From Monocercomonoides exilis PA203 (taxonomy: Eukaryota > Protista > Preaxostyla), in contig LSRY02000022.1 in the NCBI GenBank assembly GCA_001643675.2, forward strand, positions 434,001 to 498,000: DNA of 64,000 nucleotides, in the 5' to 3' direction. Under the pieces are notes generated by a model. It ran no database searches. It was not told where the DNA came from and saw only the letters and a list, made by a program, of their open reading frames with translations. Positions 7,561 through 62,883 of the stretch are shown piece by piece. A program made the position numbers and the translations under genes. Each line of letters begins with the position of its first letter. Position 1 is the stretch's first letter.

Positions 7561-9164
7561 GTGCTGTGTGCTGGCCAAATAGTCATTCTCTTCAGTTGCT
7601 TGAGAGAGTGAAGGTTACACTCCGGCTGTTTGTGTCGCAGTGAAAAATGAATCTACACCGCTTTTCTTCTCGCTCTCGCATAAATTTGAAATATGCTAGT
7701 TTTATCTTTTTCAAAACCGATCAAAATTTGGAAGATTTGTTCTCAATAAGTTGAAAATCAAAGGATCTGTTAATTGACATGGATTGATTGGCACAACATG
7801 GAGGAATGACTTCAAGCCAAGAATAAAATTATAAGCATGTTGGAACAAAGGCCATGTTTAAAAGAGTCGAACGCTCCAAATTCATCATAAAAAAAATGAA
7901 AAATAATAGATCATGATCATTATTTATTGTCAAAAAGGGATTATGCAAAAGATAAGATGCAAACGAAAAGGGGCCTCGGTGTTAATTGAGAAAGTGAATA
8001 CGTTAAATACTGGTGCGTTTTATATACGTAAAAAGATGATTTTTTAAAAGTTAGAAATTTTCATTCAGTTTATGTTTTTGAAAAAATGGAAATATTAACG
8101 CACATTCATGGAATTACAAATTTAATTTTGTTTCAAAAATGGTAAGATAATGTTATTTTCAATTCCATGCAAAAATGCCAATGTTCTAAATTGCTCAGAA
8201 TATCCTTAATCCAACTTTTTATTAATAACTTTTAAAACATTTAATTGATTAGAAGTTGGGGTCAACTTTACGTAATTTTATTAATAAAAGCACAAGGGAG
8301 CAAATGATATAACGATTTTTAACATTATACACAATTATCAAAAAAACTTAAAAAAAAAAGATGAAAGGAAATTTCTCAATTTTAAAATCAAATATCGAGG
8401 ATTTCCCAACAAAAATTGAATCAAATTTGATTTTTTGAAAAAAAGAAAACAATAATAACAAAAATAACAAAGAAAAAGAAAGGAAGAGAGACGAGGAAGA
8501 AAAAGAAGAGCAGAAATTCCAATTGAAATTTTTTTGCTTGTTTGACGAAGACCGAAGATGATGAAAAGCGCAGAAAGAAGAAAATAATTTTGAATAAGCC
8601 TTAGAAGAAAAAAGCGAAACCATTCATTTATGCATGTGTGTGATGCGGAGATTGAAGTGTAATGATCTTCAGTGGTTGCCTCGCTGTTAATGCTCTGCTG
8701 TGAATGTTGTTACAGCTGAAGAGACCATGGTTGCATCAAAGACGCACTTCACGAAGGTGCTGAGCACTTCATTTTCAAAGCAATGCCACCGCCCTGGCTT
8801 AAAAAAGTCGCCAATCGCAGAAGATGCATTATTCGATGGGGAGGAGGCTGAGTATGTTCTTCTGCAACATGAATGAATTTCGTTCTGAAAGATAGAAGGG
8901 TATAATTCAAGTGTACTGGTACCAATTGATCCGACCCAGTATTATTTTCCAAGGGTTATTTTTGATTTGGTTTTTTCTATTGATTGCAGTTTTAGGGTTA
9001 GGGTTAGCACTCGAAAATACTTGCTAGTGTTTTATTCAGCTATAGGGTTTGGGCGGAGTACTTCTTTTTAGGTTTTTGTCCAAAAATTTTAGGTTTTTCT
9101 TAGCAAAATTTTTTTAGGGTTAGGGTTGGCAATAAAAGAAAAATTAAAAATAGAACCCCATGGG

Positions 9165-9251
9165 GGTGCGATAATGGTCTAGTGGTTGGTTGATGTCCGA
9201 CCATTGTGCTAGGGTCTGGGTTCAATTCCCACTAGACCCTATTTATTTTTT
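9165..9251 (+). ncRNA. tRNA-like Pol III unit (copy 1), not a canonical tRNA
   Basis: Box A TGGTCTAGTGG (9175-9185), box B GGTTCAATTCC (9219-9229), downstream T-run (about 9246-9251); no proper acceptor stem; TTAGGG doublets upstream at about 8992-9003 and 9114-9125. Confidence 0.55.
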
Positions 9252-9930
9252 GCTAATTTTTTATTGAATTTTTGGTACCAGCTCTCTTGAATCTTACCGA
9301 TAGAAGAATGATAATTAAAAAATAATTGCAGTCAAAGAACTGAGAGGTAAAGAACTGAAATAAGATAATAATGGATAAAAATAAAATTGTGAAAGCAATT
9401 TTCACAATAATTGTATTCTGTTTACTGCTGAAGAAAAGTGGTGATGAAATAAAAAGAAGAAAAAGTTGAAAAAAGCCATGATCAGAGTATTGAAGATGTG
9501 TTTGAAAGCAGAAAATGAAAGATATCAAACAACAAAAGCAAAACAATAAAATGAAATAAAATGGATAGATAAAGAGATTGCAAATTCTTGATCAAACTTG
9601 CGAAAGTTTCAACTTCTATTTTCTAAGATAATGAATAATGACATCATGTTTTTCCACGATACAGATCTTTCAAAAAAAAATGTTTCTGTTCCCGTTGAAA
9701 CCCAGAATGTTTGAATATAATTTTCATATTTATTATTGAGGTGTGTAGCATTCCTTATTAGATCTATCAAAAATTAAAAGAATTTGTTGTTTTCCAGTGC
9801 CATAAGTCAGACAAAATACTTTTAAAATTTTAGAATGGTTCCATTTGAACATTTTTTCTTTTTTTTAACATTACCAAAAACAATACACAATTATAGAAAA
9901 TATAATCTAATAATTATTTAAAAAATTTTA

Positions 9931-9936
<6 letters not shown>

Positions 9937-9970
<34 letters not shown>
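9937..9970 (+). repeat. Poly(A) tract, 34 nt, just inside the right end of the hAT element
   Basis: Directly visible. Confidence 0.9.
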
Positions 9971-9977
<7 letters not shown>

Positions 9978-10399
9978 GTGACGAAGTGACTGACGAATGA
10001 TTTTGCTTATTAGGGTGACGCAGAGGTTTATTTATAAGAATACATAAAATAATTGAAAATGAATTTTTAAGCTTCGATATTTTTATTGTATTTTATGATC
10101 AGAAGAAATATTGTTCTTGTTGAAACTGACCATGAAAGAAGATATGAATTTTAGAAAAATTAGTTCACATAAAAATTATGAAGAACAAAGTATTTTTCCA
10201 AAGAGTGAAAACTGAATTTTGTTTCATATGATACAAATAATTTTTTATGTATTTTCAAGATTTCAGATGAATAGATTTTTTTGGCATCGAATGTTCAACC
10301 TCATCATTAGACATTAATAATGGTGAATCAGCTATGGTGACGGAATTTGCATTTCCCACCAAAAATCGACATCTCCACTTCATTTGCAAAGTTAGTCAA

Positions 10400-11560
10400 T
10401 CTGCATCACAAACGTGAGTGTAAGACCCAAATAGAATGCACATTCATCCATTATCATATTTTCATCGTATAATTCGAATTCAAACGTTTTGAAAGAATCT
10501 ATGTCTTAAGATCTTGAGATTTTTTCGTTCAAATATATTCTTTGACTATAAAAAGCAGCGAACAAAACAATAATTGTTCCTCTGACAATGATAGAGATGC
10601 AATTGAACTCAGTCGAGCGAAAACAGATAAACATAAATTGTGTGTTATTAATTCCTATTTCGATAATTGCCGATGTTATTGCTATGATAATGGTGACGGA
10701 GGCGCAATTATACATGGAATTGAACAGATCAAATAATAATTTCAAATTTTCTATTCTGCACGTTGAATTCAATGCTCATTAGAGGTGCAATTTGTTTTCA
10801 AATTAGTAGTTACAATTACAGAACACTGTTTAATTACTGTTTTTTTTATAATCTGTACATTGCATGGCCACGATATTGCTATCCATAATTCAACGTCAAA
10901 CAACATTGATTCCACCTTCAATTCCGCCAGCAAACTCCAAACACAGTCAGCTCAAATTTCAACTCAGCTGTTGATAAAAGCGAATGACTTTTTAATGAAG
11001 GTGGAAGAATTGGATTTGTTCATTCAACTGATTCGCACCCAGATGTCATTGATACATGCACATGTGGACTTGACAAAAGCTATCCGTGACGCACGATAGC
11101 TGTTGTTTGACTCAACTGATTTCAGGCTTTGAAACTGATATCGAAATACTCACAGGAACGATCACAGAAACCAAGAAAGTGGATTGTGGAATTAACACTT
11201 TCACAATATATGGCCAAAGGGATTTGAGTTCAACAGTTCAAATAGAATTCGAAGCATCTGGGTTGTCTCTATTTTCAGTTTCAACTAGTGCATTGACTAT
11301 CAGAGGTTTTATTTTTGTTCATGACCCGGTTCATCCGAATAACCGTGAGTCAAGGCTATTTGAGATTACTGGAGCAGGAGAGATGCATATAAGTGGACTG
11401 AACATATCTGTTGGGAGCGGACAATCATCAGAAACAGCATTTTCTACAGAGCTGATAAATGTTCAGAATGGGACGTTTCAAATGGAAAACATGAACTGGG
11501 CCAAAACATACTCGACTGCTTCCCAGATTTGCTTTCATCAACAAAAGAAATTTCATTGAT
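10400..11560 (+). pseudogene. Fragment of Pmp-like/beta-helix surface-protein family gene
   Basis: Frameshifted ORFs 10542-11559 with GGAI and CxT-type motifs; nucleotide similarity to 41700-42600. Confidence 0.55.
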
Positions 11561-11699
11561 GATTTCTGGCTATGCCTTTGATGGGAAAGAAAGAACAATT
11601 ATGAGTCATTTTATGGCAATCGGATTAGAAAGAAAAAGATGAACGCACAGAATCATTAGTCAAATTTGATAATAAATGAGAAGATACTCTTTCATTGCA

Positions 11700-14600
11700 T
11701 CTATTGGTTGGCATATCGAGTCTGATCGGAGTGTTCCTCGCGAAGAAGCCAGGAGCCTAGAAGAGCCAAATGCACAAAATCGGAAGACGGAGTTTCAGAA
11801 TGTGAAGCGGCAGTTCCAGCGCAGCGCAGAAGAAAACAGTTTCAACGAAAACCTCAATTCCTGCAAATAGAAAATTCCATACTCGTTGGAATGCTGGCAA
11901 AGATGACGGGCGAAGTAACACAAAACTTCACTGTTTTCATCCTCAAAGAATCCCATTTGTTCACAAGCACGCAATGCGAAAATGAAAACATTTCAATCGT
12001 CTTTTTCCAGTTGCACAACCTCCTCAATAACTGCGTCGTCATATTTCTCCTCTGCCTCAATTCCTGCTCCAAAACGCAAAAATTTCCCATCTGACTCCAA
12101 ACATCCATTTCATATTCTCGTTCATATTCGCTCCAAATTTTCTTCTCTTAACTCTCTTCCAGAATCGCATTGGTTTCCATTTGATTTTTTTCTTTCAGAT
12201 GAAATATTCGCCTTCAGCTGATTTGGAAAATATGGAGGAGTCACATACTACTCCTCCTTTTTCCTCTTCCTGTTCTTTCTCCTCCATCGCTGCAAGCTCC
12301 ACCAAAATCCACGCCATTTGGTGCAACTCTAACCACTCTAAATTCTTTGCCACAACCTATGACACAGCCTTCACCGGCAGTTTCAACCAGATCTCAACCC
12401 TTGCACCCACCTACACACACGAAAAAACCGGCTCACTGTCGTCCAGCTCCGGTTCAACAGCGCAAAGTGATGATTCACCTTCTTCACAACTGCTCTGTTC
12501 TCAGACACATCCAGATGCGCTCATCGGGAAGCAGCATCGTACACATCCGGCAACTGCTGGCACAGCGCAAAGAAGTCGTTGCGCTGGAACACCTCAAGCA
12601 CAGACGAAAATGATAGAAAACAACACACAAACGACCGTTACACTTTCAGACAGACCGGCAGCTGCTGCACTGGATATGTCTGGACTTCGCGCAAGAAGAA
12701 GAAATTCAAACTTAAAGTCTGCGATGCACATGATAACGAAGGGGACTCAGTTGATGTTTCTCAACTGCGCATCTCATCTTGCTGCACTTTTATCTACTAC
12801 TTCCGCTTCGCTGTTTCTTCCCCTCATAAGTTCATCAAAGATTCAAGAAACATAAACATTTCGGCCTCCCCTTTCTCCGGATGCATCCCCTCAATCTCCG
12901 CAAAATGTTTCAAGGTCCTCTTGCGCAACTTCCCTTCATGCACCGTGTAGATGCATTTCTTGCAAATCCGAAACAAAGCCATCAGGAAGTTCTCGCTCTC
13001 CTCCATCGACTGCTGAGACAGCATTTCTCAATTCTTCAATGGGTTGAAGAACAGGAAGAGCGAAAGCTCGTCTCCAGTGAACTCCTCCCCCACAAACTTC
13101 CCAAACAGCAACATTTGCACAAAGTCCTTCGGGAACAGCTCCACATCGTAGATCATCGCTCATCGTGCAGCCTTGCTCTTCTTCTCCTCTGAGTTCTTTT
13201 CCGTAAAACACATGAACACAAAGTTCACAAACTCCCGCACACACATCTCTGCCCCGGCCAGGGTCTGTCTCGGTCTTATCTCAGTAAATCCCCCGAATCT
13301 TCTGAATCTTTCTCGCAAGCAACAATTGCCGCACTATCTTAAGCAATTTCAGCAGACGCTGCATCGACACAGATCACAGCTACGCGGGAGGCATGTATAG
13401 AACATTCGCCGTTTCATACGCAACCTGCCCCAGAAACCCAAACGCTTTACTCATCATCCGCTCCATCGCCGTCGGCACCTCCAGCAAAGATTCACCACCT
13501 GTTCCAGACAACCCTGCCCCGTTTACGATCGACAAATTCACAGACCACTCCGATTCCTCAAAGTCTCAATCAGTCTTCCGCATAAGAAGCAAAAACAGCT
13601 GCTGCACAACATTCGTCTTCACTTCCCCTTTCTTTTCACCTGTTGGAACTGCAGTTGATATCCATTCTTCCCACTCTCTTTTCGGATCTCAGTGTGGAAA
13701 CAGATAATCTTACACAGCGTACTCGTATTTCTTTCTTCTGCCATTTCACACTCCTCTGCCCCGTATCTCCGATCCCACCAAAGCTCCCTCATTCCATCTT
13801 CTCTTTCAGCTACTTCGCATTCTCAGTCAGATGCTCTTCTGTCTCTTCATGTATGGTCTTCATTTTCTTCTGCTTATCTTTTTATTCTTGAATCGTTTGA
13901 TTTTTCCAGTCAAAAAGGATATCCCCACTTTCACAGCAAACACCTTCAAGTTCTGGTCTCACCAAAGCATCACAACACCGTTGTCACCGATGTTCACTAC
14001 AAACTTCCACTGTTTCTGTTCACACAGTCCAAATAGAATAATCAACGAAAGCGAAGATGGTACCATCCTGCGAAACAGAGAGACAAGCAAAGAAAACGTG
14101 GCAAAATGATTCCCCTTCACAGCCGACGACATCTCATTTTTTCCGTTCACATTCCTGCACTGTATTTCTTTGTCTGGCGCTTCTTCTCCTTCTCAATCTT
14201 TCCACCAATCAACTCCACCTTCTCCTTCATCTCCACCAGCTGCTCCTGCAGCTCCATAGCCTCATTCACCTCTGCGCTGTGCTTTTCTCTCAGCTCCAGA
14301 TTCTTCATCTGATTCGTCCGGATAATCTTGTCTATCTCCTCCAGCTTCTCTATCTGTCCTTCAATCCGCTTCACTTCATTCACCCATTATTCTCCTTCTT
14401 CTTCATCTGCTCCTTATCCTTTTCCTATTTCTTCTTTTCTTTTCCATTCTCTTCCTATTTCTTCCTTGTATTTTGCCATCGTTACAGCTGCTGGAGACAG
14501 AACCGCATCCTCCATCCTCAACCTCGCCTTCTTCATCGCCTTCTTCTCGGCTTCTTCCTCGCATAGCATACTCCTATCCCACGCCCAATCACCTCATCAT

Positions 14601-15030
14601 CAATCTTTATTATGAAACGCATCGGCTGCAGTGATAAAAACTCCATCAACACAATCGCACACGGAAACGGCGAATAGATAAACAGATCATAGATCTACGG
14701 CAACGCATTCACATCTGCTGCTGCAAAGATCCGCTTGCTCCCCGACTTCGTGTCCACCGACGCTGCAAGAGACGGAAGCGGGGCCACCAGCGGAACCGAA
14801 AGCATCACTAAAAGAGCCTCATCGGAGGCACACACCACTCCCATGCAGCACCGCCGTTCGCACCACAACATATCCCGGCAGCGCCAGCGGTTACAGCAGC
14901 AGCTGCAGCGACAGCGGCATGTGCCACCAATACACCCCAGCCACATCAGGCACCAAAATTCGCAGTCACCTTTCGATGTCGTCCATTGCTGCTGCCGACA
15001 GGTTTTATGCAGCCACAGCTGATGTATTGG
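11700..15030 (-). pseudogene. Large degenerate gene of an unidentified multicopy family
   Basis: GC-richer coding-like sequence with many stops and frameshifts on the minus strand, E/K coiled-coil segment at 14147-14383; 14640-15000 is paralogous to 48620-48960. Borders approximate. Confidence 0.5.
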
Positions 15031-16473
15031 ACGAATCAATATCCGGCACATATTATGATAAATACTTATCCCCTTCTTCTTCTTTAATAGGGATATCGGT
15101 AAGGGAAGATTTGAATAAGTGATAGGTGTGCTGCTCTTATTAAAGAAAACAATGAAAGTTAAAACAAACGAAGCAAATTGCAGTTTGATGTATGGTAACA
15201 GTTTAAAATACACTTAGTATTCATTTTCATTCCTTTATTGTCTCATTTTCAAAAATAAATAAAAACTAAAAATAAAGATTATTAATTGTGTTATTTTTTG
15301 CTTGAATGCATTTCAATCATAAATTCTTTAAAGTTGAAATAATAATAAGTTTTTAACAAATTGTCAAAGTGCACTTTTTGCTATATTAATAGCCTCAAAG
15401 TTGAAAAATAAAAATAATTAAAATTTCAAAATCAACAGATATGAAGCTAATAAAAAATATATTCATTTGCTCAATGAGGTTATATTGATTAATATCGTTG
15501 CTGTTCAAATGAAAGATTTGAAAAAATCGTTGTGTTGAAAAAGATAAAAGGAAAAACTTAAAATTTACGTATTTCACTTAAACAACAAAAATAAACAATA
15601 AAATACTTCAAGTTATGTGTTCATCGGTTTGTGTCAACAAATATTATTGCAAATAATAAAACGTCAAACTCTTCCATAGAGAAAAAAAGAGTGCATAAAT
15701 TATTTAATAAATTATTACGGTTTACAAATATATCGTCCTAACTTTTTGTGGGATAGATCAGGATAAAAAAAAGTGATTTTTCAAAAATTTTCACCCATTT
15801 ATGTGCTCAAAAATTGTAATTGTATTGTAAATTCGAATTATTATTGGTTGATATCTGAAACTTAAGAACTCTGAGACTTTATTTCATTTTTTGAACAATG
15901 ATTTTAGGCATACACTATTAGTTTCAAATTTTGTTTTTCATTCTTGAAAAGTTGAAAAATTTATTAAACGAAACAATCGTTTTTAGATGAAAATTTGAAA
16001 TTCAACAAGCATCAATCTATTTATCTGAATATTATTGAATTTTTCATGGAAACTTTAAAGATTTTAAATTGTTTGAAAAGTTTTTGTTTAAAAGTTTTCT
16101 TTTTTTAATTGCTTTTACGAAAGAGCAATTCAGCTTCTTCCTTTAAAGCTATAACTTTTTTTGGCAAATTCGCGTTATATCGGACATCGAAAAATTGATT
16201 TTATTGTTGATAGAAATGTTTATCAATCAAATATATTCATGTTTCGGTGATTCAAATAGCGCGGAAGTTAGTCAAAATCAGGTTTTTAATTTTTCTTTTT
16301 TCAAAAAATTATAATTGTGGGTCAATGAAAAAAGTCGAAAAATCGAAAAAATTGACACAGTTATTATTCACCCTCTCGTTCTGATAAATCTGCACAATCG
16401 GACAATCCCAAGCCATCACTTTTCGGAATAATTAAACTTATGTGATAATAAAAAAATTAATAAATTAAAAATG

Positions 16474-16560
16474 AAAAAAAAGTACTTGGTGGGATTCGAA
16501 CCATAGACCATTCCATTAACACAAGAAAAATCCTAACCATACAATCAGTGCTTCACACTG
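16474..16560 (-). ncRNA. tRNA-like Pol III unit (copy 2)
   Basis: Minus strand reads AGCACTGATTGTATGGTTAGG...TTGTG...GGTCTATGGTTCGAATCCCACCAAGTAC then a T-run; perfect box B at 16491-16502, degenerate box A; TTAGGG repeats upstream on the minus strand (about 16595-16656). Confidence 0.5.
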
Positions 16561-16707
16561 AAAGATTCTATTCAAAAATTTTCTTTTATTTTTAACCCTA
16601 ACCCTAAAACAAAACAAACCCTAAAAAGTTGATTCAAATGCAAACCCTAACCCTAAAGCCACAGTTGAAACGAAAATTGATAGAGAAATGAAAAAAAAAT
16701 ATATATA

Positions 16708-19245
16708 CAGTCAGTGCCAAAGCCGATCCTTGGTGCGAAACCCGATCCTTTAAAATATGCTAATATCGAAAATTTTGAAAATAAATTCTCATCAACGCAT
16801 TTCAAAAAATAAAAACATGATAAATTAACACAATAATCATCATTAATCTATGTTTAGCAATTATGAAATCACAAGTCAATGAAATGATTGATGAAATAGA
16901 AAAGAACGAATATTTTCATTTTAAATTATCATATAAGGAAAAAATGAGATCATATTTGAGTTATTGAAAGAAATTGACACAAAAAACGATGATTAATATC
17001 AAAAAATGCAAAATGTTTTCATTAAAAGCATTTATCAAAATTATCAATTTGATCATGACCCATATAACATGAGCAACAAAACATATCTCTCTCCTCTTCA
17101 ACTTCATCGCGAACTTGCATCCAGCAAATATCGTTCCATTCCTTCAACAACGAAAAAATATTTGCAATTCGAAATGATTATTCACTGAAATGGCAAACTG
17201 CGGTGAATGAAAAACTTATATCCAAAGGAGCTTGGTTCAGGGAAATCAAAGCACAAAAGGAAGGAAGGGATGTTTGAGTTGATGGGCATCCTTTAACCAT
17301 CAATTCACGACAGCTCGAAACAATAGAAAATCAAGTTCTTGTGAAGTTGTCGGAACAGGAAACTGTTAGAGTGCATGACGTTCAAAACATGGTTTGATTC
17401 GTTTTTGACTTTTTTTTTTATATATACATTATTATGAGTGCGTGGATATTCTCGAAAAGGATTCTACAGATGAAAACGAGCCAAGAAAAATAAACGAAAA
17501 ATATGCATACAAGTTGCTAAAAAGAAGTGAAATTATTCATGCTGCAATTTCAAGGCCAACTGACATTTCAAAAATTGCGGCTCAATCGCCAGAGAATGTC
17601 AGACAATGGTTTGAAGAATTGTCTGAGGATATTAGCAGGAATAACATTGATTCATCGAGTATATTTAATTTTGATGAAACCTCATTGAATTTGAATGAAA
17701 GTTCAAGCAAACTAATTGTTTGCCTGAAAAATCAAATTCCTCCGTCTTCTCCAGCTCCTCCGAAAGTGCCAAATTCAACGTTGTGCTTATGTGTATGTGC
17801 GGATGGATCCTCTCCAAGAAAATTTCTTCTTTGGCCGACAAAACGTTTACCCGAAGAATTTTCTAAACTTACGTCTTTCGATATTGAAGTTCTTCCTTCA
17901 TCATCTGGATGGATTACAAAAGAGATTTTCAGGAGCATCATGATCAACAGCTGGATTCCCTGGATCGTGTTCAAAGTTAAGCCAACCACTACACATAAAG
18001 CCCTGTTCTTGATGGATAATCATATTTCTCATGCAGATGATTCTGTTTCAAGATCGGCTGAGGAACACAACATAATAATAATATTCTTTCCTCCCAACAT
18101 GACTCATCTTTTACAGCCATGTGATTCATGCATCTTCTCTCGTTTGAAAACAACGCTTTATAACAAGTTCCAAATTCCTTCTCCGTTTTCAATCCATTCA
18201 TACTGAGCATCACTTGCGGACACTCTCCCTGAAGCAGTAGCTGCAGCAACAATGCCTTCCACAATCAAATCAGCTTTCATTAAAAGTGGAGTTTGGCCTG
18301 TTGCTGCCGCCCCAGTTTTGGAACGCATATCTGGATCACCAATACAGAATCTCAAATGCAATTCTGAAACTTCTGTTTCATCCCGAGATTGGAGAGAAGA
18401 GTTGTTTGGGAAATATTCTCCTCAAAGCGACAAACAATTATCTTCTTCACAACCTTCAAAGCATTCATCTGTGAAAGATTCTGCAATAACAAAAGAACCG
18501 ACAACATTGATCGTTAATCACAGAAAATTTTCGACCGACGAAAATTCCACTGAAGGAAAAACATCAAAAGAAGCTAATGAGATGGATGAATCTGAGCTAA
18601 TGAAACAAATTGAAGCAACAAAAGAGCATTTACATTTTCTTCAAAAGCAGCTTGAGAAAATTGGAAAACCAACTTCATCTTCTTCTGAAAAGAAACGAAA
18701 GAATAAACATAGTCGACAAGAACTTAATGAATTGATGAATTTAGAACCTGCAAAGGAAAAAAAGGCTTCGAGAAAAAATGCAAAGAGAATGATTGAAATA
18801 CTTAAAGACGATGAAAAAGAAGTGAAATCAACTTCAAAAAATGAAAACAGAGATTTCGATCACCCTCCCAGAGAAATTTCTCCTTCATTTAATTCGAAAG
18901 AGAAACGCATTAGAGAAACATACTACTCAAAATTCAACTGCAGAATAAAACTCTAGCCTTCACATTATTTTGAAGAACAAACTAGAAGTTTTCTATTTGA
19001 AGAATTGCTTCATATCGATTATTTTTAACCATTCCAATAATAAAACAAAAACAAAATGTATTTTCTTTGTTTATTATTTCATTTGAAAATGACTAAATAT
19101 GTTGCCAAATACCTGGTTCCAAAGAATAGTTAAACACATTTTGTTTTTTGTTGAAGAAATATTAAACAACTTCGAAAAATGATCGCATTCTCTCTCTCTC
19201 TTTTGGTTCGGGTTTCGCACCAAGGATCGGCTTTGGCACCGACTG
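16708..19245 (+). mobile_element. pogo-like (Tc1/mariner superfamily) transposon, 2538 bp
   Basis: 38-bp TIRs CAGTC[A/G]GTGCCAAAGCCGATCCTTGGTGCGAAACCCGA (16708-16745, 19208-19245; 1 mismatch) with TA on both sides; DDE_1 transposase inside. Confidence 0.93.
17069..18956 (+). pseudogene. pogo/DDE_1 transposase (DD35D), disrupted
   Basis: FNFDET, SSGWIT, LMDNH, HLLQPCD with 35 residues between D2 and D3; in-frame TGA at 18204-18206 followed by 18252-18956 in the same frame; more stops in the N-terminal exon; probable intron after about 17391. Confidence 0.88.
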
Positions 19246-19804
19246 TAATAGGTTTATTAAACTATTCCGTAAACTGTTCAAGTGAACACTCTTCATTAAA
19301 AATGCATAAATTCAATAAAAAACTGAAATTTTCATTTGTCTTGAAAAAGCTATTTTTGGACTTTATCTTTTTTTCGTTAACCCTAATCGGGAATTGACCC
19401 AAAATTGTAATATTTTCGAAACATTTTTTATTTTTGACAAAACGTTTTCCGCGCCTTAAAACTATTTTTAAAATGAATAAGATACACATTTAGGTATATC
19501 AGACGCAAAAAAACTGGAATTTTCGTTGTCCAATATAACGCGATTATGCCCTTTTTTTTCTTTTTCCATTTGAACGATCGTCAGGTGGGTAGGAATTATG
19601 TGCATAATGAATTTTGTTCCACGGAATACTTACAAATATTTTTTTCAACTTTTAAATAATTTTCTTTATTTTATTTTGCACAAGAATATATGAATATTAA
19701 TAATTCAATAACAAAAAAATTAAGAATTAAAGGTCTATTTTTCATATTTGCGAAAATTTTTGAGGCAGATTTAAAGTTTAACCCATTAGATATTATCAAA
19801 AGAG

Positions 19805-49989: not shown

Positions 49990-52900
49990 ATGTCTTCTGC
50001 TTTTGTATGTTTTTGTGTGAACTATGAACATACATGTTTTGGAGAAGATGTTTACATATGTGGGTCAGAAGAGATTTTAGGAGAATGGAACCCTTCAAAT
50101 GCAATTAGGTTACAATGCAAAGATTTTATTTGGTTTGCATTTTTGACAATTCCATTGAGAACGAATATCGAATACAAAGTTTGCTTTTATATATTTGAAC
50201 GTGTAAAATTGTGTATTGCTTTTAAAATTTAATGAAAAATCACACATATTTTTGATATTGATGAAAACGTTATTTGTGAAAACGAAACAAAATAATGTTA
50301 TTCTTAATTGCATTATTATTTTGAATATTTTTTCAGTACTTTTTCAAAAGTGGAGATTATATTCGATGGGAAGAAAGAAGTCATTTCCGTTCATTTGACG
50401 TTGCTCCAGGCGAAATAGTTGAGGTACGTGATTTGTGGCACGACAGAGCTAACTTTACTGAAGATATATCATCAACGTCTCTGATTCAAGACGTTTGCAT
50501 GCATCGTGAAAAGTCAGATGAATTTCCTAAAGTTGAAAAACCAGATGATGAAAAAGTTTCAGTTGTTTTTGAAATTCCAGTACCATTAATTTCACCACAA
50601 GAAAGCATCCATTTGATTGGTGCATCAAAAAAGAATAAATTCTGGAATCTTGCGGGAGCTCAAAAACTTTTTGAAGCTGAAGCTCCATTTTTCAAATGTA
50701 TTCGTTCTTTTGATTTTGACGAACTACCGGTTCAATACAAGTTCGTTCTTACACACAACTTGGGATGGGAATGCGAGAACATCGAAACAGGACCGAACAG
50801 TGAATGCGGCAAGCCGATGCCAATCGATTTAAATTTGCCAGACGCTGTTGTTTGGACGTTCCAAGAAGGCAAAGCTAAAGCAGTTCACTTCACCGATGCA
50901 ATAGCTTCTCACATGTGCCAGAGCCCAACAGCAGGGCATGCCCAGATCATCTTCATTGAATCGCCCTCATTTCGCTATCCAAACGAGCCCCACTTCCGTG
51001 CTGCGGGCGTGGCGATCCCTGTGTTTGCTCTGAGGTCAAAGCAATCACTTGGCGTTGGAGAATTCGCAGACCTGCCGCTTCTGGCGAAGTGGTGCCAGAT
51101 GGCTGGGCTGCGGGTGGTTCAGCTGCTTCCTGTCACAGACACAGCAGTCAACGGTGTCAGCTGGATGGACTCGGATCCGTTCTCTTCTGTTTCTTCCTTT
51201 GCGCTGCACCCAATCTACATCAACATCGACTCCTTGCAGCCACTCCCTGCTGACATCGCAGCTGATCTCCCAACACAGCGCGAAAAACTCAACACACCCA
51301 AATTAGACTACGAAGCAACACTGAAGCTGAAGCTGAGCTATTTGGAGCGCATCTTCGACCTCCACCTCACACACGACGGCGGGTTTGAGAGAGATGAAGA
51401 GTTCATCCAGTTTCAAAAGGACTCTGCATACTGGATGCCTTCGTATGCTGTATTCAAAACGCTCTCCAGCCAGAACGGGACGACAAACTGGCAGGGCTGG
51501 CCAGAAGAGCTGAGCGACGCCTGCAATGTGGAGAAGATTGTGGCTGAAATGACGCAGCCAGCACATTGCTTGTATCGCGAAGTGCTGTTCCACATGTGGG
51601 TGCAGTTCCATTTGGACCGCCAATTCAGAGAAGCAAGCCGGAGATGTGCGTGTGAGTTGCACGTTGGGCTGAAGGGAGACATTCCCGTAGGCTGTGAGCT
51701 GCGCTCTGCAGACACGTGGTACTTCCGCAAGTACTTCAGACTCGACATGCGGGTTGGCTCGCGGCCAGACGCTGCTTCTGCGCCAGAGGGACAGAACTGG
51801 GGCATCCCTGCATTCAACTGGGAGAACATCCTGGCAGACAACTTTGAGTGGTGGGGCAAGAGACTGAAAGCAATGGAGCGGTTCTTCCACGCCTGCCAAG
51901 TGGATCAGCTGCTGTCGTATTGCCGCAGTTGGCTCATCCCGCGTGAGAGTCTTTCTGCTCTCCACGGACGGTTTGTGCCTGGAAGACTGGTGAGTGAAGG
52001 AGAGCTTGTGAAGAGATCGGGGCTGAAGGATTTGTATGGCAGGCTGACGCTGCCTGTGATCACGAAGGGGCTGGTGGAGCAGGTGTTTGGGAAGAACAAT
52101 GGGGGAGAAGGAGAAGGAGAAGAGGAAGAAGAAGGGGAAGAAGAAATAGAACAGATAATCAGGACATTTTTGGAGCCAGCAGAGGAAAGTGCAGATTCTG
52201 ACTATGTGTTTCGGGAGGAGTTCAACACAGAGAGGAAGATTGCAGACTATTTGATCGAGCAGCTTGGGATTAACGACGAGTCTGGGGAAGAAGAGCTGGC
52301 AGCTCTGGACTCCTTTCTGAGGAAGATGCATGTGCTGACCAACAGTGTGTGTCTGTATGCCTTTGACGAAGGAGAAGAGGTGAGCTATGCGCCCCGCTTC
52401 AATGTGGCGAGCACAGTTTCCTGGAAGATGCTGGGGGCAGACTGGCAAGATGCGCTTTTGCAGCTGGAGAGGGAGTATTTCAGTGAGTGGGGGTGGCATG
52501 GAGAATTGTTTGAAAAATCTGCGTGGACGAAGCTGGGGAAGATGAAAGAGGCGACAAGGATGTTGTTGTGTGGGGATGATGTAGGGCTGGCGGTGGATGA
52601 TAATTGCGGAGGGGGGTTTTCTTCTTCTTCTTTTCTCCGCAGAATTATGCACTCTCTCCACATTTTGGGTCTTCGTGTGCAGAGAGTGACGGGCAATCCA
52701 TCGGAGAATTATTTCCACCCGAAAAATTACTCCGAAGATGTGATTGCTGCCACATCCACACATGATATGCCTCCATTACGTGCATGGTGGCAAATAACTC
52801 CTCCTCCTACATCTTCATCTTCATCTTCATCTTCACCTTCTTTGTCTTTTTTGAAATATAATTATGATTATGATTCTTCTATTTCTTCTTTTTCTTCTCC

Positions 52901-53378
52901 TCCTCCTCCTCCTTCTTCTTCATTTTCCTCTTCAACTTTCCCTCAATCTGAAGATAAAGATAAAGACGAATTCACAGAAGAAAAAGAAAAAGAAGAAAAA
53001 GAAGAAAACCTGCCTCTTTCTCCTCAATTTCAAATCGAGAGCTGCATAAGAGACAGATTCTGGTACAACACCCTCTGCAACTCATCGCCTCGCCCTTCTT
53101 CTCTTCCGAGCGATCAATTAGAGCGAATTATTGACATGCACATGTTTTCTCCTGCGATGATAGCGATTTTCTTGTATCAGGATATTGTTGCTATTTTGCC
53201 GGATGATGAAGTTTATCACAAAGACCCATGGGACGAGGTGATCAATAACCCGGACAGCAAAAAACACTATTGGCAGTACAGGATGCCCTGCTTTATCGAA
53301 AGACTGATGGAAAAATCAGTTCTAATTGAGAGAATAAAAGGGAAAGTTGTTCATTCAGGAAGATTACGGATTCATTAA
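49990..53378 (+). CDS. DPE2: DPE2-type 4-alpha-glucanotransferase (CBM20 domains + GH77), about 1076 aa
   Basis: Intron 50179-50336 joins the CBM20 motif IEYK|YFFKSGDYIRWE; second CBM20-like region; AGVAIPVFALRS, GVGEFADL, QLLPVTDT, SSFALHPIY, LKGDIPVG, GQNWGIP, STHDMPPLRAWW, HYWQYRM. Confidence 0.93.
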
Positions 53379-60351: not shown

Positions 60352-62883
60352 ATGCAAAAAGTGAAGACAGAAAATATGAACAATTCCAGAAAAGAATATT
60401 TTCGAAGAAACAGAGCAAATCGAATGGAATCTCGCGGTGAGATATCTGGTATTAATGGAAGGCCACGATATTTAACGAAGGAAGAAGAAGAGAAGCTTGT
60501 TCAAATTATATTAAATTGGCACAATATTTTGAAGCAGCCATCAATTAATGACATTCCTTTTTTAGTATGATTTTTTTATTTTGAAATTTGAAACTTATTT
60601 TCCAATAAAGGCAAGACAAATTCGAATCGAAAGATCTCCGGCCTCGACTGAATATATCGAAACACCAAGTCTGAGATGGGTTTACGATTTTTTATCAAGG
60701 CAAAAACAATTGTGCATGATAAATCCAGTTCGACTTGATCATGCACGCTTGAGAGCATCGTTAAAAGCAAATATACAGTCTTTTCTTTCTCATTTGCGAA
60801 CTTTGATGCTGAAGAAAAAATATCATCCTTCGTTAATATTACAATTGGACGAAACAAGTTGTCAGTCCAACGGTCGTCATCATAATAAAAGAATTGCAAA
60901 TGAGAAATGCATATACTTGCCATGTTTGGAAACTCCTCCTCTTCGTCATTTAACTCTTTTATTTATTGTGAGAGCTGATGGATATCATCTCCCCACTCAT
61001 CTTCTTTTAAGTTCAAAATATGAAAAAGAAATAAACGAACAATGGAATGACGAATCGTTCGTATTGCATTCAACTCAAAAAGGATGGATGACAAAAGAGC
61101 TATTTGAAAAAATAACGTTAGAACATGTTCTTCCTTTCATTCAAAAGCAAAGAAAAGTTGTTGAAAGAATTCAACAATATCAATATGAAATATTCCAAAA
61201 AAATCTTGTGAATTGAAAACGAAAGAAAGAAGGTTGGAAATATGCGATCAGAAAATGAAAAAGAATGAAACAAGTGAAAAAACAACACAACAAAATTTTC
61301 AAGACGAAGACGATCATGAATCAATAGCATTGCATTCATCAGCTGGATCAGAACTATTTCCAATAGATAACTCAGATTCACCGACAAAATCCCAGCGATC
61401 CAAAGATCAGTGCGATAATGAAAATAGTCACAAGGAATCCATTTGTATTGACAAACTGGAACTTTCAGATACAATATCTTCAGAAGGAGATCGAATTCAA
61501 GCGTTGCAGCAACTGCACCAATCCGCATCTGGCCGTTCAAAAGAATCTTCAGAGTGTGAAAATTCTTTTCGAAACAAAAAGAGTTTTCAAATACCATCAA
61601 ATGGATTTCCTAAAGTTGATGTTGATGAAATTACTAACTTTCGTGATGAAACTTATTTAAGTTCTTCTGAAGAAAGAATGTTTCTAATTGAAGAAGATGA
61701 TAATAGAGATTGGTGGATAAAGAATGACACTCAGATGCAAAAAGCAAACTTTACGAAAAAAGAAATTACTCAATACGAAAAAATATCCGAAGAAAAAATA
61801 AGCAATTCATCACTCTCTGCTTTAATAATTCTTGACGGACACTCTTCAAGACAAAATATCCAGCTGTGGCAAAAGTTTTCTGAAGAAAACGTGGATGTCG
61901 TTGTGCTACCAGCACACACATCCCATATCCTTCAGCCACTTGATCTCGGACCTAATGCAGCACTAAAAAAGCAATTGAAATATGTTCGAAATGAACCAAG
62001 TGTGAGAAAAATGAAAACAGAATTTTTACCTTTTGTCCAAGCAATCGCAGATTGCTCTTATTATGCGATGGCCCCAAGAATAACACGGCATGGGTTCTAC
62101 GAAGCTGGAATAACGTCTTCTCGAATATCTCACGTACTGAGGCGCACTTTGGATTACTTGCCTTTCGGTGTAAAACCGGCTAGACAGACGAACCGATGGT
62201 CTATCTCTGGAAAACTAATAACATCAACAGCAGTTCTAAAAGAATGGCAAGCTTTTGAAGAGAAAAAGTCTATTTGTGATGATGAAAGAGTTGAGAATGT
62301 TCACATAACAAATATTAATCAAAAAACGATTAAAAATAAAAAGGAAAGACCTTCATCTTCAAAAATAACTTCTTCTGATTCCAAGCTTTCAAACCTTACT
62401 GCTAATGAGAATACTGGTGACAATACTGACACTGACGATATCTTATGTTCAACAGATTTCGAATCAGATCCAACTGATTCACAAGAAGGGGAAGAAAATA
62501 TTTTGGTCGTTCGTGTTTTCAGAAGAAAAAACAAACAGAAAAGACTGATTCTGTGCCGGTCAGATCATTTGGATGAACCTGATGGTCGAAAACAAGTGAC
62601 TGATTTATCGAGTTCCTCTAATTATTCTGAAGATGAATCTTCAGAGACTGATCATCATTCCGACAGATTAAATAAATCGAAAGAAAAGAGAAAAAAAGAT
62701 CTTGACAGCAGTGAATACATAGAAGATGATCTTTCATCAAGCAACGAAGAAGAAGATTCGGATGAAAAAAAATTGTCCAAAAAATATTCCATGAGATCGG
62801 AAAAATGTTTGCCCAAAAGATTATCTGAGCATTATGTTCTTTTCACGGATTCTGATGAAAGTGAGTACAATCCAAAGAAATGA
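60352..62883 (+). mobile_element. Second pogo/DDE_1 (DD35D) transposase gene with an intron and one frameshift
   Basis: Exon 60352-60564 (GRPRYLT), intron 60565-60610, then LQLDET, KGWMTK, ILDGHSS, LPAHTSHILQPLD; frameshift near 61200; TIR-like doublet CAAAAACCCG at about 60124-60151; no right TIR seen in the window. Confidence 0.85.

What the first reader, a model, noticed from the sequence alone, without database searches (positions are those of the whole stretch)
16474..16660. Second, diverged copy of the same cassette inside an unrelated GG-terminated element
Seen on the minus strand: TTTAGGGTTAGGGTT-AAAAATAAAAGAAAATTTTTGAATAGAA, then a unit ending GGTCTATGGTTCGAATCCCAC and a T-run. Copy 1 reads TTTAGGGTTAGGGTT-GGCAATAAAAGAAAAATTAAAAATAGAA...GGTCTGGGTTCAATTCCCAC. 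Upstream motif, spacing, box B and terminator are conserved while the middle of the RNA differs. Upstream sequence is not copied by retroposition, which argues against a simple SINE. The cassette makes up much of an approximately 850-bp non-autonomous element. Inference: a module with conserved scaffold and variable core shared across transposon superfamilies. This is my best candidate for an undescribed system here.
Basis: partly seen in the sequence, partly recalled or inferred. Interest (0 to 1): 0.8.

Follow-up and report, generated by a model that had tools for sequence, protein, structure and literature searches.

The report
Merlin transposon's tRNA-like tail module
The second "cassette" is real, but it is the inherited tail end of one group of cut-and-paste (Merlin) transposons in the protist Monocercomonoides exilis: telomere-type TTAGGG motifs, an A-rich signal and a decayed tRNA-like RNA polymerase III unit, not a module traded between unrelated transposons.

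Summary
The quoted strings are at window 16474-16660 (minus strand) and match copy 1 at 8991-9251; chance expectation is about 0.

Both copies lie in Merlin-type elements with GGYAWNAT termini and 8-bp target duplications. Copy 1 is a 400-bp MITE. Its 1,482-bp autonomous form encodes a DDE_Tnp_IS1595 (Merlin) transposase, not hAT, and carries the cassette between the stop codon and the 3' end. Copy 2 is an 852-bp MITE (16163-16705 plus 19248-19550) split by a nested pogo-like transposon.

Homology between families runs about 200 bp collinearly, so the cassette is shared by descent. A sequence model finds about 42 copies in the genome. Between lineages the TTAGGG dimer, AATAAAAGA, AAATAGAA and box B blocks stay 83% identical, against 50% for the rest.

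Genuine tRNA genes lack this upstream context. In family 1, pogo-like transposons that land 2-7 nt upstream of real tRNA genes also land at the unit's 5' edge, so it is treated as a Pol III gene. For copy 2's family there is no such evidence, and no RNA contigs cover it.

This scan reached the same reading earlier on other DNA (s1-464073).

The parts
16163..16705 (-). 3' part of the 852-bp family-2 Merlin-type MITE. It holds the cassette and the 3' TIR (16163-16189 reads GGCAAATTCGCGTTATATCGGACATCG on the plus strand).
   Evidence: BLAST to 11 other copies at 73-95% identity. Sharp 3' boundary in the alignment. TSD AAAAAAAG at 16155-16162.
19248..19550 (-). 5' part of the same family-2 MITE, with the 5' TIR GGCATAATCGCGTTATATTGGACAACG at 19524-19550. 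The matching TSD AAAAAAAG is at 19551-19558.
   Evidence: 95% identity over 305 bp to the 5' part of L019; sequence read; TSD checked.
16708..19245 (+). Nested pogo-like (DDE_1) DNA transposon that splits the MITE. It has 40-bp TIRs (CAGTCAGTGCCAAAGCCGATCC...) and a TA duplication at 16706-16707 and 19246-19247.
   Evidence: Inverted 40-bp match 16706-16745 / 19247-19208. ORF 17442-18206 hits Pfam DDE_1 at 6e-16. Junctions.
16643..16657 (-). Distal telomere-type dimer TTTAGGGTTAGGGTT.
   Evidence: The position is conserved in families 1, 2 and 3.
16615..16623 (-). Middle TAGGGTTTG motif.
   Evidence: aligned block CTTTTTAGGGTTTTG in all lineages.
16594..16608 (-). Proximal dimer TTTAGGGTTAGGGTT. 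This is the most conserved block between lineages (97%).
16579..16590 (-). AATAAAAGAAAA, containing a canonical AATAAA. It may be the poly(A) signal of the ancestral transposase mRNA, an upstream A-rich Pol III element, or both.
   Evidence: 85% conserved between lineages. M. exilis poly(A) signals are AAUAAA/AAAUAA, 20-30 nt before the cleavage site (PMC8767320).
16566..16573 (-). GAATAGAA block just upstream of the unit. It lies where genuine tRNA genes have their A-rich box.
   Evidence: 78% conserved between lineages. tRNA upstream profile is A-rich at -21..-17.
16482..16560 (-). Degenerate tRNA-like unit. It has an A-box-like stretch GTATGGTTAGGA (16531-16542) and a perfect box B GGTTCGAATCC (16492-16502).
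   Evidence: Not accepted by ARAGORN or Rfam. Fold is no better than shuffles, z = 0.13.
16474..16481 (-). T8 run, a Pol III-type terminator.
   Evidence: an oligo-T is present in most copies.
8899..9298 (+). Copy 1: a 400-bp family-1 Merlin MITE (TIR GGTATAATTCAAGTGTACTGGTACC, TSD GATAGAAG) carrying the better-preserved cassette. A box TGGTCTAGTGG is at 9175-9185, box B at 9219-9229 and the oligo-T runs to 9251.
   Evidence: The autonomous form is L002/L003.

Best explanation
The feature is the conserved 3'-terminal module of a small clade of Merlin (IS1016/IS1595-like) cut-and-paste transposons of Monocercomonoides exilis. Their short non-autonomous derivatives (MITEs) keep it. In the autonomous element the order is: TIR, transposase gene, a stretch with TAGGGTT motifs ending in a TTAGGGTTAGGG dimer, an AATAAA-containing A-rich block, a tRNA-derived Pol III-type unit (A box, B box, oligo-T), TIR.

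Shown: copy 1 and copy 2 resemble each other because their host elements descend from a common Merlin ancestor. The blocks that stay conserved between lineages are control-type motifs, while the body of the unit drifts.

Shown for family 1 only: the cell's Pol III-directed targeting treats the unit as a tRNA gene. Two different pogo-like transposon families that normally insert 2-7 nt upstream of real tRNA genes have inserted at the equivalent position of the unit.

Inferred: masters of the lineage are selected to keep a TFIIIC/TFIIIB-bound site and a site for a telomere-repeat-binding factor. AATAAA probably serves as the transposase mRNA's poly(A) signal, with cleavage falling at the unit's start.

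The copy in this finding (family 2) is an old, decayed member with a weak A box and no significant fold. It is probably inert.
For: Host elements.
- Family 1 is a 400-bp MITE with an 8-bp TSD.
- Its 1,482-bp autonomous form (L002, L003 and the C8 copy) has the same TIRs, the TSD TAATTTTC and an ORF hitting DDE_Tnp_IS1595 at 1e-23. The cassette lies between the stop codon and the 3' TIR.
- Family 2 is 852 bp with 8-bp TSDs in L019, L020 and the window.
- TIRs of families 1, 2 and 3 and of a Merlin contig from another sample (L094) share the GGYAWNAT...GGA pattern.
- The three families align collinearly over about 200 bp, including three TAGGGTT positions upstream of the unit.

Copy number and conservation.
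- Model R1 finds 45 hits, about 42 copies, in the genome. The pattern search gives 27 hits against 0 in the control.
- Between lineages the motif blocks are 83% identical and the rest 50% (permutation p about 0.005). The TTAGGG dimer is 97% identical.

Pol III recognition.
- Three family-1 copies are split by nested TAG...CTA transposons. Two are split at CCCCAT|GGGGG (window 9161/9162) and one 12 bp further in.
- One of those transposon families is pogo/Tc5 (DDE_1 plus HTH_Tnp_Tc5). Five of its roughly 17 copies abut ARAGORN-called tRNA genes at 2-7 nt.

Context.
- Genuine tRNA genes lack the TTAGGG dimer and AATAAAAG upstream, 0 of 27.
- The species' poly(A) signals are AAUAAA/AAAUAA, 20-30 nt before cleavage (PMC8767320).
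Against: - No autonomous partner was found for family 2. Its Merlin assignment rests on TIRs, TSDs and homology to family 1. blastx of the element found nothing.
- There is no expression evidence. Four metatranscriptome runs give zero contig depth over 15600-16599 while neighbouring genes are covered. Contigs and library type are poor at catching RNAs of about 80 nt.
- Among the 12 family-2 copies recovered, three carry nested insertions (L026, L028, L029), and none is at the unit's 5' edge. All family-2 and family-3 hits of the model are unsplit at that position.
- Within family 2 the cassette is no better conserved than the rest of the element: 0.73-0.94 against 0.81 overall.
- The motif blocks for the between-lineage test were chosen after seeing the alignment.
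- A 40%-identical Merlin from another sample (L094) shows no cassette.
- The one U6 gene found shows no TAGGGTT 50-110 nt before ACAGAGA, so TTAGGG is not shown to be a general Pol III upstream element.
Confidence: 0.75

Rival explanations
1. Passive relic. A tRNA gene, or a fragment of one, was captured once by an ancestral Merlin element and has been carried along without any role. The conserved blocks reflect shared ancestry, low-complexity sequence and post hoc block choice.
For: No progenitor tRNA stands out among 13 isoacceptors; best scores fall within the range of shuffles. Copies decay evenly within family 2. No RNA contigs cover the unit. There are only about 42 copies against at least 150, and up to 575 candidate, Merlin transposase matches.
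Against: Lineages whose unit bodies are only about 50% identical keep the TTAGGG dimer at 97% and box B at 70% in the same register. Family 1 is still recognised by tRNA-gene-targeting transposons. The 3' hairpin shows some compensatory change between families 1 and 3: 69% of cells paired against 42-52% in slid controls.
Confidence: 0.2
2. The cassette is a small-RNA expression module with a fixed promoter and terminator scaffold and an exchangeable, guide-like core. It is shared horizontally among unrelated transposon superfamilies.
For: The scaffold is conserved and the middle is diverged. The upstream context differs from that of genuine tRNA genes.
Against: All hosts examined are of one superfamily with related TIRs and 8-bp TSDs. 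The middles are alignable and diverge gradually rather than being swapped. Genome searches with both cassettes returned only family members, with no antisense targets. Copy 2 has no significant fold.
Confidence: 0.04
3. mRNA 3'-end module. The whole stretch serves the Pol II transposase transcript. The TAGGGTT/U-rich region is the 3' UTR and AATAAA is the poly(A) signal. The tRNA-like hairpin plus oligo-T acts as a processing site (RNase P/Z, as in MALAT1-mascRNA) or as a roadblock that stops read-through. This can coexist with Pol III binding.
For: In the autonomous element the stretch begins about 130 bp after the stop codon. AATAAA lies 20-30 nt before the unit's start, which is the spacing reported for M. 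exilis cleavage sites, and it has U-rich flanks. Families 1 and 3 keep a 12-bp acceptor/T-arm-like hairpin.
Against: No transcript ends were observed. Family 3 has GATAAA instead of AATAAA. An RNase P substrate would need a better preserved acceptor/T-arm than family 2 has. Targeting by Pol III-directed transposons points to DNA-level Pol III factors.
Confidence: 0.25

Closest known systems
Merlin DNA transposons and their MITEs (IS1016/IS1595-related; Feschotte 2004, from my own knowledge)
   Same: TIRs begin with GG. TSDs are 8 bp. The autonomous copy is compact at 1.5 kb and encodes a DDE_Tnp_IS1595 transposase. Short deletion derivatives have amplified to about ten copies each.
   Different: It carries an internal tRNA-like Pol III-type unit preceded by telomere-type TTAGGG dimers. 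I found no description of such a Merlin in the paper library. A Merlin relative from another sample lacks it.
tRNA-derived SINEs
   Same: Internal A-box and B-box-like motifs, a decayed tRNA-like body and an oligo-T.
   Different: It moves as DNA: it has TIRs, a fixed 8-bp TSD, about 150 bp of copied upstream sequence and an autonomous transposase-encoding form. It has no LINE-type tail.
Pol III-gene-targeted mobile elements: Ty3, Ty1, Dictyostelium TRE5-A and DGLT-A (PMC5911963, PMC6101501); Dada DNA transposons that insert into small-RNA genes (from my own knowledge)
   Same: The pogo-like elements that hit the family-1 unit sit a few nucleotides upstream of tRNA genes, near the expected Pol III start. 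This resembles Ty3.
   Different: They are cut-and-paste DDE_1/pogo transposons with a 2-bp duplication that is not restricted to TA at these sites. They are not retrotransposons. They insert upstream of the gene, not inside it as Dada does.
Chromatin barrier elements of yeast: tDNA/TFIIIC sites and Tbf1-bound TTAGGG sites (from my own knowledge)
   Same: The two best conserved parts of the module are a TTAGGG dimer and a B-box-bearing tDNA-like unit.
   Different: No binding or barrier activity was tested here. The resemblance is by motif only.

Membership tests
Genuine tRNA gene | Cloverleaf recognised by tRNA finders or a covariance model | tested here: not met
   ARAGORN finds 0 genes in the window. 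Rfam gives no tRNA hit at the gathering score or at E<=10 over 8000-18000. Genuine tRNA genes of this genome score 58-71 bits.
Genuine tRNA gene | The species' own upstream signature: A-rich at -21..-17, T-rich at -14..-6, AA at -2/-1 | tested here: inconclusive
   Profile built from 27 contexts. The cassette has an A-rich block at the matching distance in family 1 but lacks the T-rich and CAA-like parts.
Pol III type-2 transcription unit | A box TRGCNNAGTGG and B box GGTTCGANTCC 30-60 bp apart, followed by an oligo-T | tested here: met
   Family 1: TGGTCTAGTGG (10 of 11), GGTTCAATTCC (10 of 11), 43 bp apart, oligo-T follows. Copy 2: box B 11 of 11 and a T8 run, but the A box is weak (GTATGGTTAGGA).
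Pol III type-2 transcription unit | Evidence of transcription or factor occupancy | tested here: inconclusive
   Family 1 has an indirect proxy: it is hit by tRNA-gene-targeting transposons at the equivalent of -8. Copy 2 has no such insertion and no RNA contigs.
Merlin superfamily (family 1, copy 1) | GG-initiated TIRs, 8-9 bp TSD, IS1595-type DDE transposase in the autonomous form | tested here: met
   TIR and TSD GATAGAAG / TAATTTTC. Pfam DDE_Tnp_IS1595 at 1.1e-23. Homologues are named ISXO2-like transposases.
Merlin superfamily (family 2, this finding) | GG-initiated TIRs and 8-9 bp TSD | tested here: met
   TIR GGCATAATCGCG... with TSD AAAAAAAG in the window. 8-bp TSDs in L019 and L020. 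The TIR resembles that of Merlin contig L094.
Merlin superfamily (family 2, this finding) | An autonomous partner encoding the Merlin transposase | tested here: inconclusive
   None was found among the loci held. Further genome DNA could not be fetched.
   The autonomous form encodes Merlin, not hAT. The termini start GGTATAAT. Only the 8-bp TSD fits.
tRNA-derived SINE | Retroposition hallmarks: no TIRs, upstream sequence not copied, LINE-like or A-rich tail | tested here: not met
   TIRs, a fixed 8-bp TSD and copied upstream sequence are present in all copies.

The most novel reading that the evidence does not exclude
A Merlin lineage carries a compound protein-landing module: a telomere-repeat dimer for a TTAGGG-binding Myb factor, plus a TFIIIC/TFIIIB-bound tDNA-like unit. 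The module would act as a chromatin barrier or Pol II terminator that shields the transposon or its neighbours. As a side effect, it makes these elements landing pads for the genome's tRNA-gene-targeting pogo transposons.
Probability: 0.15. Interest if true: 0.7.

Novelty: new variant of a known kind. Interest (0 to 1): 0.4.

Why it matters
Merlin elements and MITEs are ordinary. A DNA-transposon lineage that keeps a Pol III-type tRNA-like unit and a telomere-repeat dimer through family divergence is unusual. It is also treated as a tRNA gene by other transposons. If the unit really binds Pol III factors, it would be a natural case of a transposon carrying its own tDNA-type element. It would also be a handle on Pol III-directed integration by cut-and-paste transposons, which the reviews read here describe only for retrotransposons. 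For genome annotation, it moves part of the 35% "unclassified" repeats of M. exilis into Merlin and pogo families. The specific claim of a new system shared across superfamilies does not hold.

Tried and rejected
- tRNA or known-RNA identity: ARAGORN and Rfam gave nothing relevant.
- Progenitor tRNA: local alignment to 13 isoacceptors was not above shuffles.
- Guide or antisense targets: genome searches with both cassettes returned only family members.
- Extra constraint within family 2: none.
- Fold: copy 2 z = 0.13 and L010 z = 0.15. Only families 1 and 3 fold well, z = -2.9 and -3.7.
- Expression: RNA contigs of four runs gave zero depth over 15600-16599.
- TTAGGG as a general snRNA or Pol III upstream element: no TAGGGTT 50-110 nt before ACAGAGA of U6. 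This is weak, because the U6 motif itself was not verified.
- Cassette outside this genome: 0 hits in metagenome contigs. A Merlin relative from another sample (L094) has no cassette.
- My interim reading that the window copy is 5'-truncated was wrong. The 5' part lies at 19248-19550, beyond a nested element.
- Coding remnants in family 2 by blastx: none.

Full report
**1. Observation**

The parts, with coordinates checked, are:
- distal TTTAGGGTTAGGGTT at 16643-16657
- TAGGGTTTG at 16615-16623
- proximal TTTAGGGTTAGGGTT at 16594-16608
- AATAAAAGAAAA at 16579-16590
- GAATAGAA at 16566-16573
- a 79-nt unit at 16482-16560 ending in GGTCTATGGTTCGAATCCCACCAAGTAC
- a T8 run at 16474-16481

Copy 1 (8991-9251, plus strand) has the same order. 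The 15-mer occurs four times in the window against 0.00 expected. The box-B 14-mer occurs twice against 0.05 expected.

**2. Organism**

The window is contig C17:434001-498000 of an 82.3-Mb, 101-contig assembly. Homologues of a transposase from this genome are named Monocercomonoides exilis. The assembly statistics match the published Nanopore assembly of strain PA203: 101 contigs and an N50 of 1,379,369, which is the length of C17 (PMC8767320). That paper leaves 35% of the genome as unclassified repeats and does not mention tRNA genes, Merlin or MITEs.

**3. What carries the two copies**

Copy 1 lies in a 400-bp element at 8899-9298. It has the TIRs GGTATAATTCAAGTGTACTGGTACC and the 8-bp duplication GATAGAAG, and other copies are 95-98% identical.

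Three loci (L002, L003 and the C8 locus) hold a 1,482-bp form with the same ends and the duplication TAATTTTC. Its ORF hits Pfam DDE_Tnp_IS1595 at 1.1e-23. The ORF has one in-frame TAA that may lie in a short intron. The cassette sits between the stop codon and the 3' TIR. Copy 1 is therefore in a Merlin MITE, not a hAT element.

Copy 2 belongs to a family whose full length is 852 bp, with TIRs GGCATAATCGCGTTATATCGGACAACG and 8-bp duplications. I first read the window copy as 5'-truncated. That was wrong. Its first 303 bp are at 19248-19550, 95% identical to L019. The duplication AAAAAAAG flanks 16163 and 19550. A 2.54-kb pogo-like transposon (16708-19245, 40-bp TIRs, TA duplication, DDE_1 ORF) is nested between the two parts.

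A third family (L015-L017) has the same layout and ends in GGCAAGAATGCAC....

**4. Shared by descent, not exchanged**

The TIRs of the three families, and of a Merlin contig from an unrelated sample, follow one pattern, and all have 8-bp duplications. Consensus sequences of the families align collinearly for about 200 bp. The alignment includes three TAGGGTT positions well upstream of the unit. In families 1 and 3 the same 47-bp distance separates the oligo-T from the element end.

The middles are alignable and drift gradually. A sequence-only covariance model of the cassette finds 45 hits, about 42 copies, in the genome. A strict pattern gives 27 hits against 0 in the reversed control.

This genome has at least 150 Merlin transposase matches, with 575 candidates at first look, so the cassette marks a subset of them.

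**5. Is it a tRNA gene with the usual context?**

No.
- ARAGORN and Rfam reject all units.
- No progenitor tRNA stands out.
- Of 27 distinct upstream contexts of genuine tRNA genes, none has the TTAGGG dimer within 250 bp or AATAAAAG within 80 bp.
- Genuine tRNA genes have their own signature instead: A-rich at -21..-17, T-rich at -14..-6 and AA at -2/-1.

Only the A-rich box at a similar distance is shared.

**6. What is conserved**

Within family 2 the cassette decays like the rest of the element, as expected for dead copies.

Between lineages the picture differs:

| Block | Identity between lineages |
|---|---|
| TTAGGG dimer | 97% |
| AATAAAAGA | 85% |
| AAATAGAA | 78% |
| box B | 70% |
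| body of the unit | 47-58% |

Overall this is 83% against 50%, permutation p about 0.005. The blocks were chosen after seeing the alignment.

Families 1 and 3 fold significantly, z = -2.9 and -3.7. Both share a 12-bp acceptor/T-arm-like hairpin with some compensatory changes: 69% of cells are paired against 42-52% when slid, and 7-8 of 500 shuffles reach the observed values. Copy 2 does not fold better than shuffles, z = 0.13.

**7. Evidence that the unit is seen as a Pol III gene**

Three family-1 copies are interrupted by other transposons with TAG...CTA ends. Two different families inserted at exactly CCCCAT|GGGGG (window 9161/9162). That is 8 nt before the position that corresponds to tRNA +1, counting back from the A box. 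A third insertion lies 12 bp further in.

One of these families encodes a pogo/Tc5 transposase (DDE_1 plus HTH_Tnp_Tc5). Of its roughly 17 copies, five abut ARAGORN-called tRNA genes (Val-CAC, Val-AAC, Thr, Glu, Asp) at 2-7 nt. Others abut tRNA-like units or sit inside further elements of this kind. The other family's ends directly precede tRNA-Gln and tRNA-Arg genes.

This is indirect but specific evidence that Pol III factors occupy the family-1 unit. Family 2 shows no such insertion. The three nested insertions seen among its 12 recovered copies lie elsewhere, and all its model hits are unsplit at that position.

**8. Expression**

Four metatranscriptome runs that contain this organism's RNA cover the neighbouring genes (11000-15100). 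They give zero contig depth over 15600-16599. Contigs from such libraries are poor at catching 80-nt RNAs, so this is weak negative evidence.

**9. The A-rich block**

The species' poly(A) signals are AAUAAA and AAAUAA, 20-30 nt upstream of the cleavage site, with U-rich flanks (PMC8767320). In the autonomous element the TAGGGTT stretch begins about 130 bp after the stop codon. AATAAA lies 20-30 nt before the unit's first base.

A likely reading is that this block ends the transposase mRNA and that the Pol III-type unit lies just beyond the cleavage site. This is inference; no transcript ends were seen.

**10. Comparison with known systems, and verdict**

The element meets the Merlin definition: fully for family 1, and by TIR and TSD for family 2. 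It fails the definitions of a tRNA gene, a SINE and hAT.

It works like a Pol III type-2 unit by motif, and for family 1 by the targeting proxy. The two best conserved parts, a TTAGGG dimer and a B-box tDNA-like unit, are both classical barrier-type protein landing sites in yeast (my own knowledge). That gives a testable but unproven function.

Paper searches found no Merlin with such a module. The Pol III-targeting literature retrieved concerns retrotransposons, and the one review read describes no DNA transposon that targets Pol III genes.

The same reading was reached earlier in this scan on another piece of the genome (s1-464073). This finding adds the cross-family comparison.

Verdict: the copy is real. 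It is an ordinary mobile element of a known superfamily with an unusual conserved tail. The claim of a cross-superfamily "system" is not supported.

Noticed in passing
L064-L093 (e.g. L071 = C25:1080634-1083656; L088 = C16:377065-380087); also L047, L050/L051, L057/L058: Pogo/Tc5-type cut-and-paste transposons sit 2-7 nt upstream of genuine tRNA genes (Val, Thr, Glu, Asp, Gln, Arg). Their TIRs read TAGTCGGGGTGGAAACCCGAGCC or TAGAACTT... Their 2-bp duplications are not restricted to TA (AT, GA, GG, TC). They pile up inside each other. This looks like Pol III-directed targeting by DNA transposons.
   Followed up: partly
window 16708-19245: A 2.54-kb pogo-like element related to the tRNA-targeting group (DDE_1 ORFs at 17442-18206 and 18252-18956, 40-bp TIRs) is nested in the family-2 MITE with a TA duplication. 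It lies about 145 bp upstream of the tRNA-like unit.
   Followed up: partly
L031-L060 (30 tRNA loci): Genuine tRNA genes share a strong upstream signature: A-rich at -21..-17, T-rich at -14..-6 and CAA/AA at -5..-1. This suggests upstream promoter elements for Pol III in this oxymonad.
   Followed up: partly
L081 (C30:365680-368702), just outside a pogo-like end: Another non-canonical tRNA-like unit (box B GGTTCGAAACC, then about 17 T) abuts a tRNA-targeting transposon end. ARAGORN does not call it.
   Followed up: no
L073/L074 (C44:649181-652873): Both outward flanks of one pogo-like element begin with the same 42 nt of a tRNA-like 5' half. This suggests an inverted duplication or two head-to-head insertions at one intron-bearing tRNA gene.
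   Followed up: no
G000:C13:1514915-1515057 (+) and C13:1520588-1520730 (-): Two cassette copies lie in inverted orientation 5.7 kb apart. They may form a composite or foldback arrangement.
   Followed up: no
L002 (rc 544-546 of the locus, element position 326-328); the same in L003: The family-1 Merlin transposase ORF has a single in-frame TAA between the zinc-finger-like N-terminus and the DDE domain, in otherwise near-identical copies. It could be a short intron or a shared defect.
   Followed up: no
window 50433-53378 (+): An intron-free 981-aa ORF with a split Glyco_hydro_77 domain (4-alpha-glucanotransferase, DPE2-like; Pfam 1e-92).
   Followed up: no
window 61213-62883 (+): A further DDE_1 (pogo-like) transposase ORF of 556 aa.
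   Followed up: no
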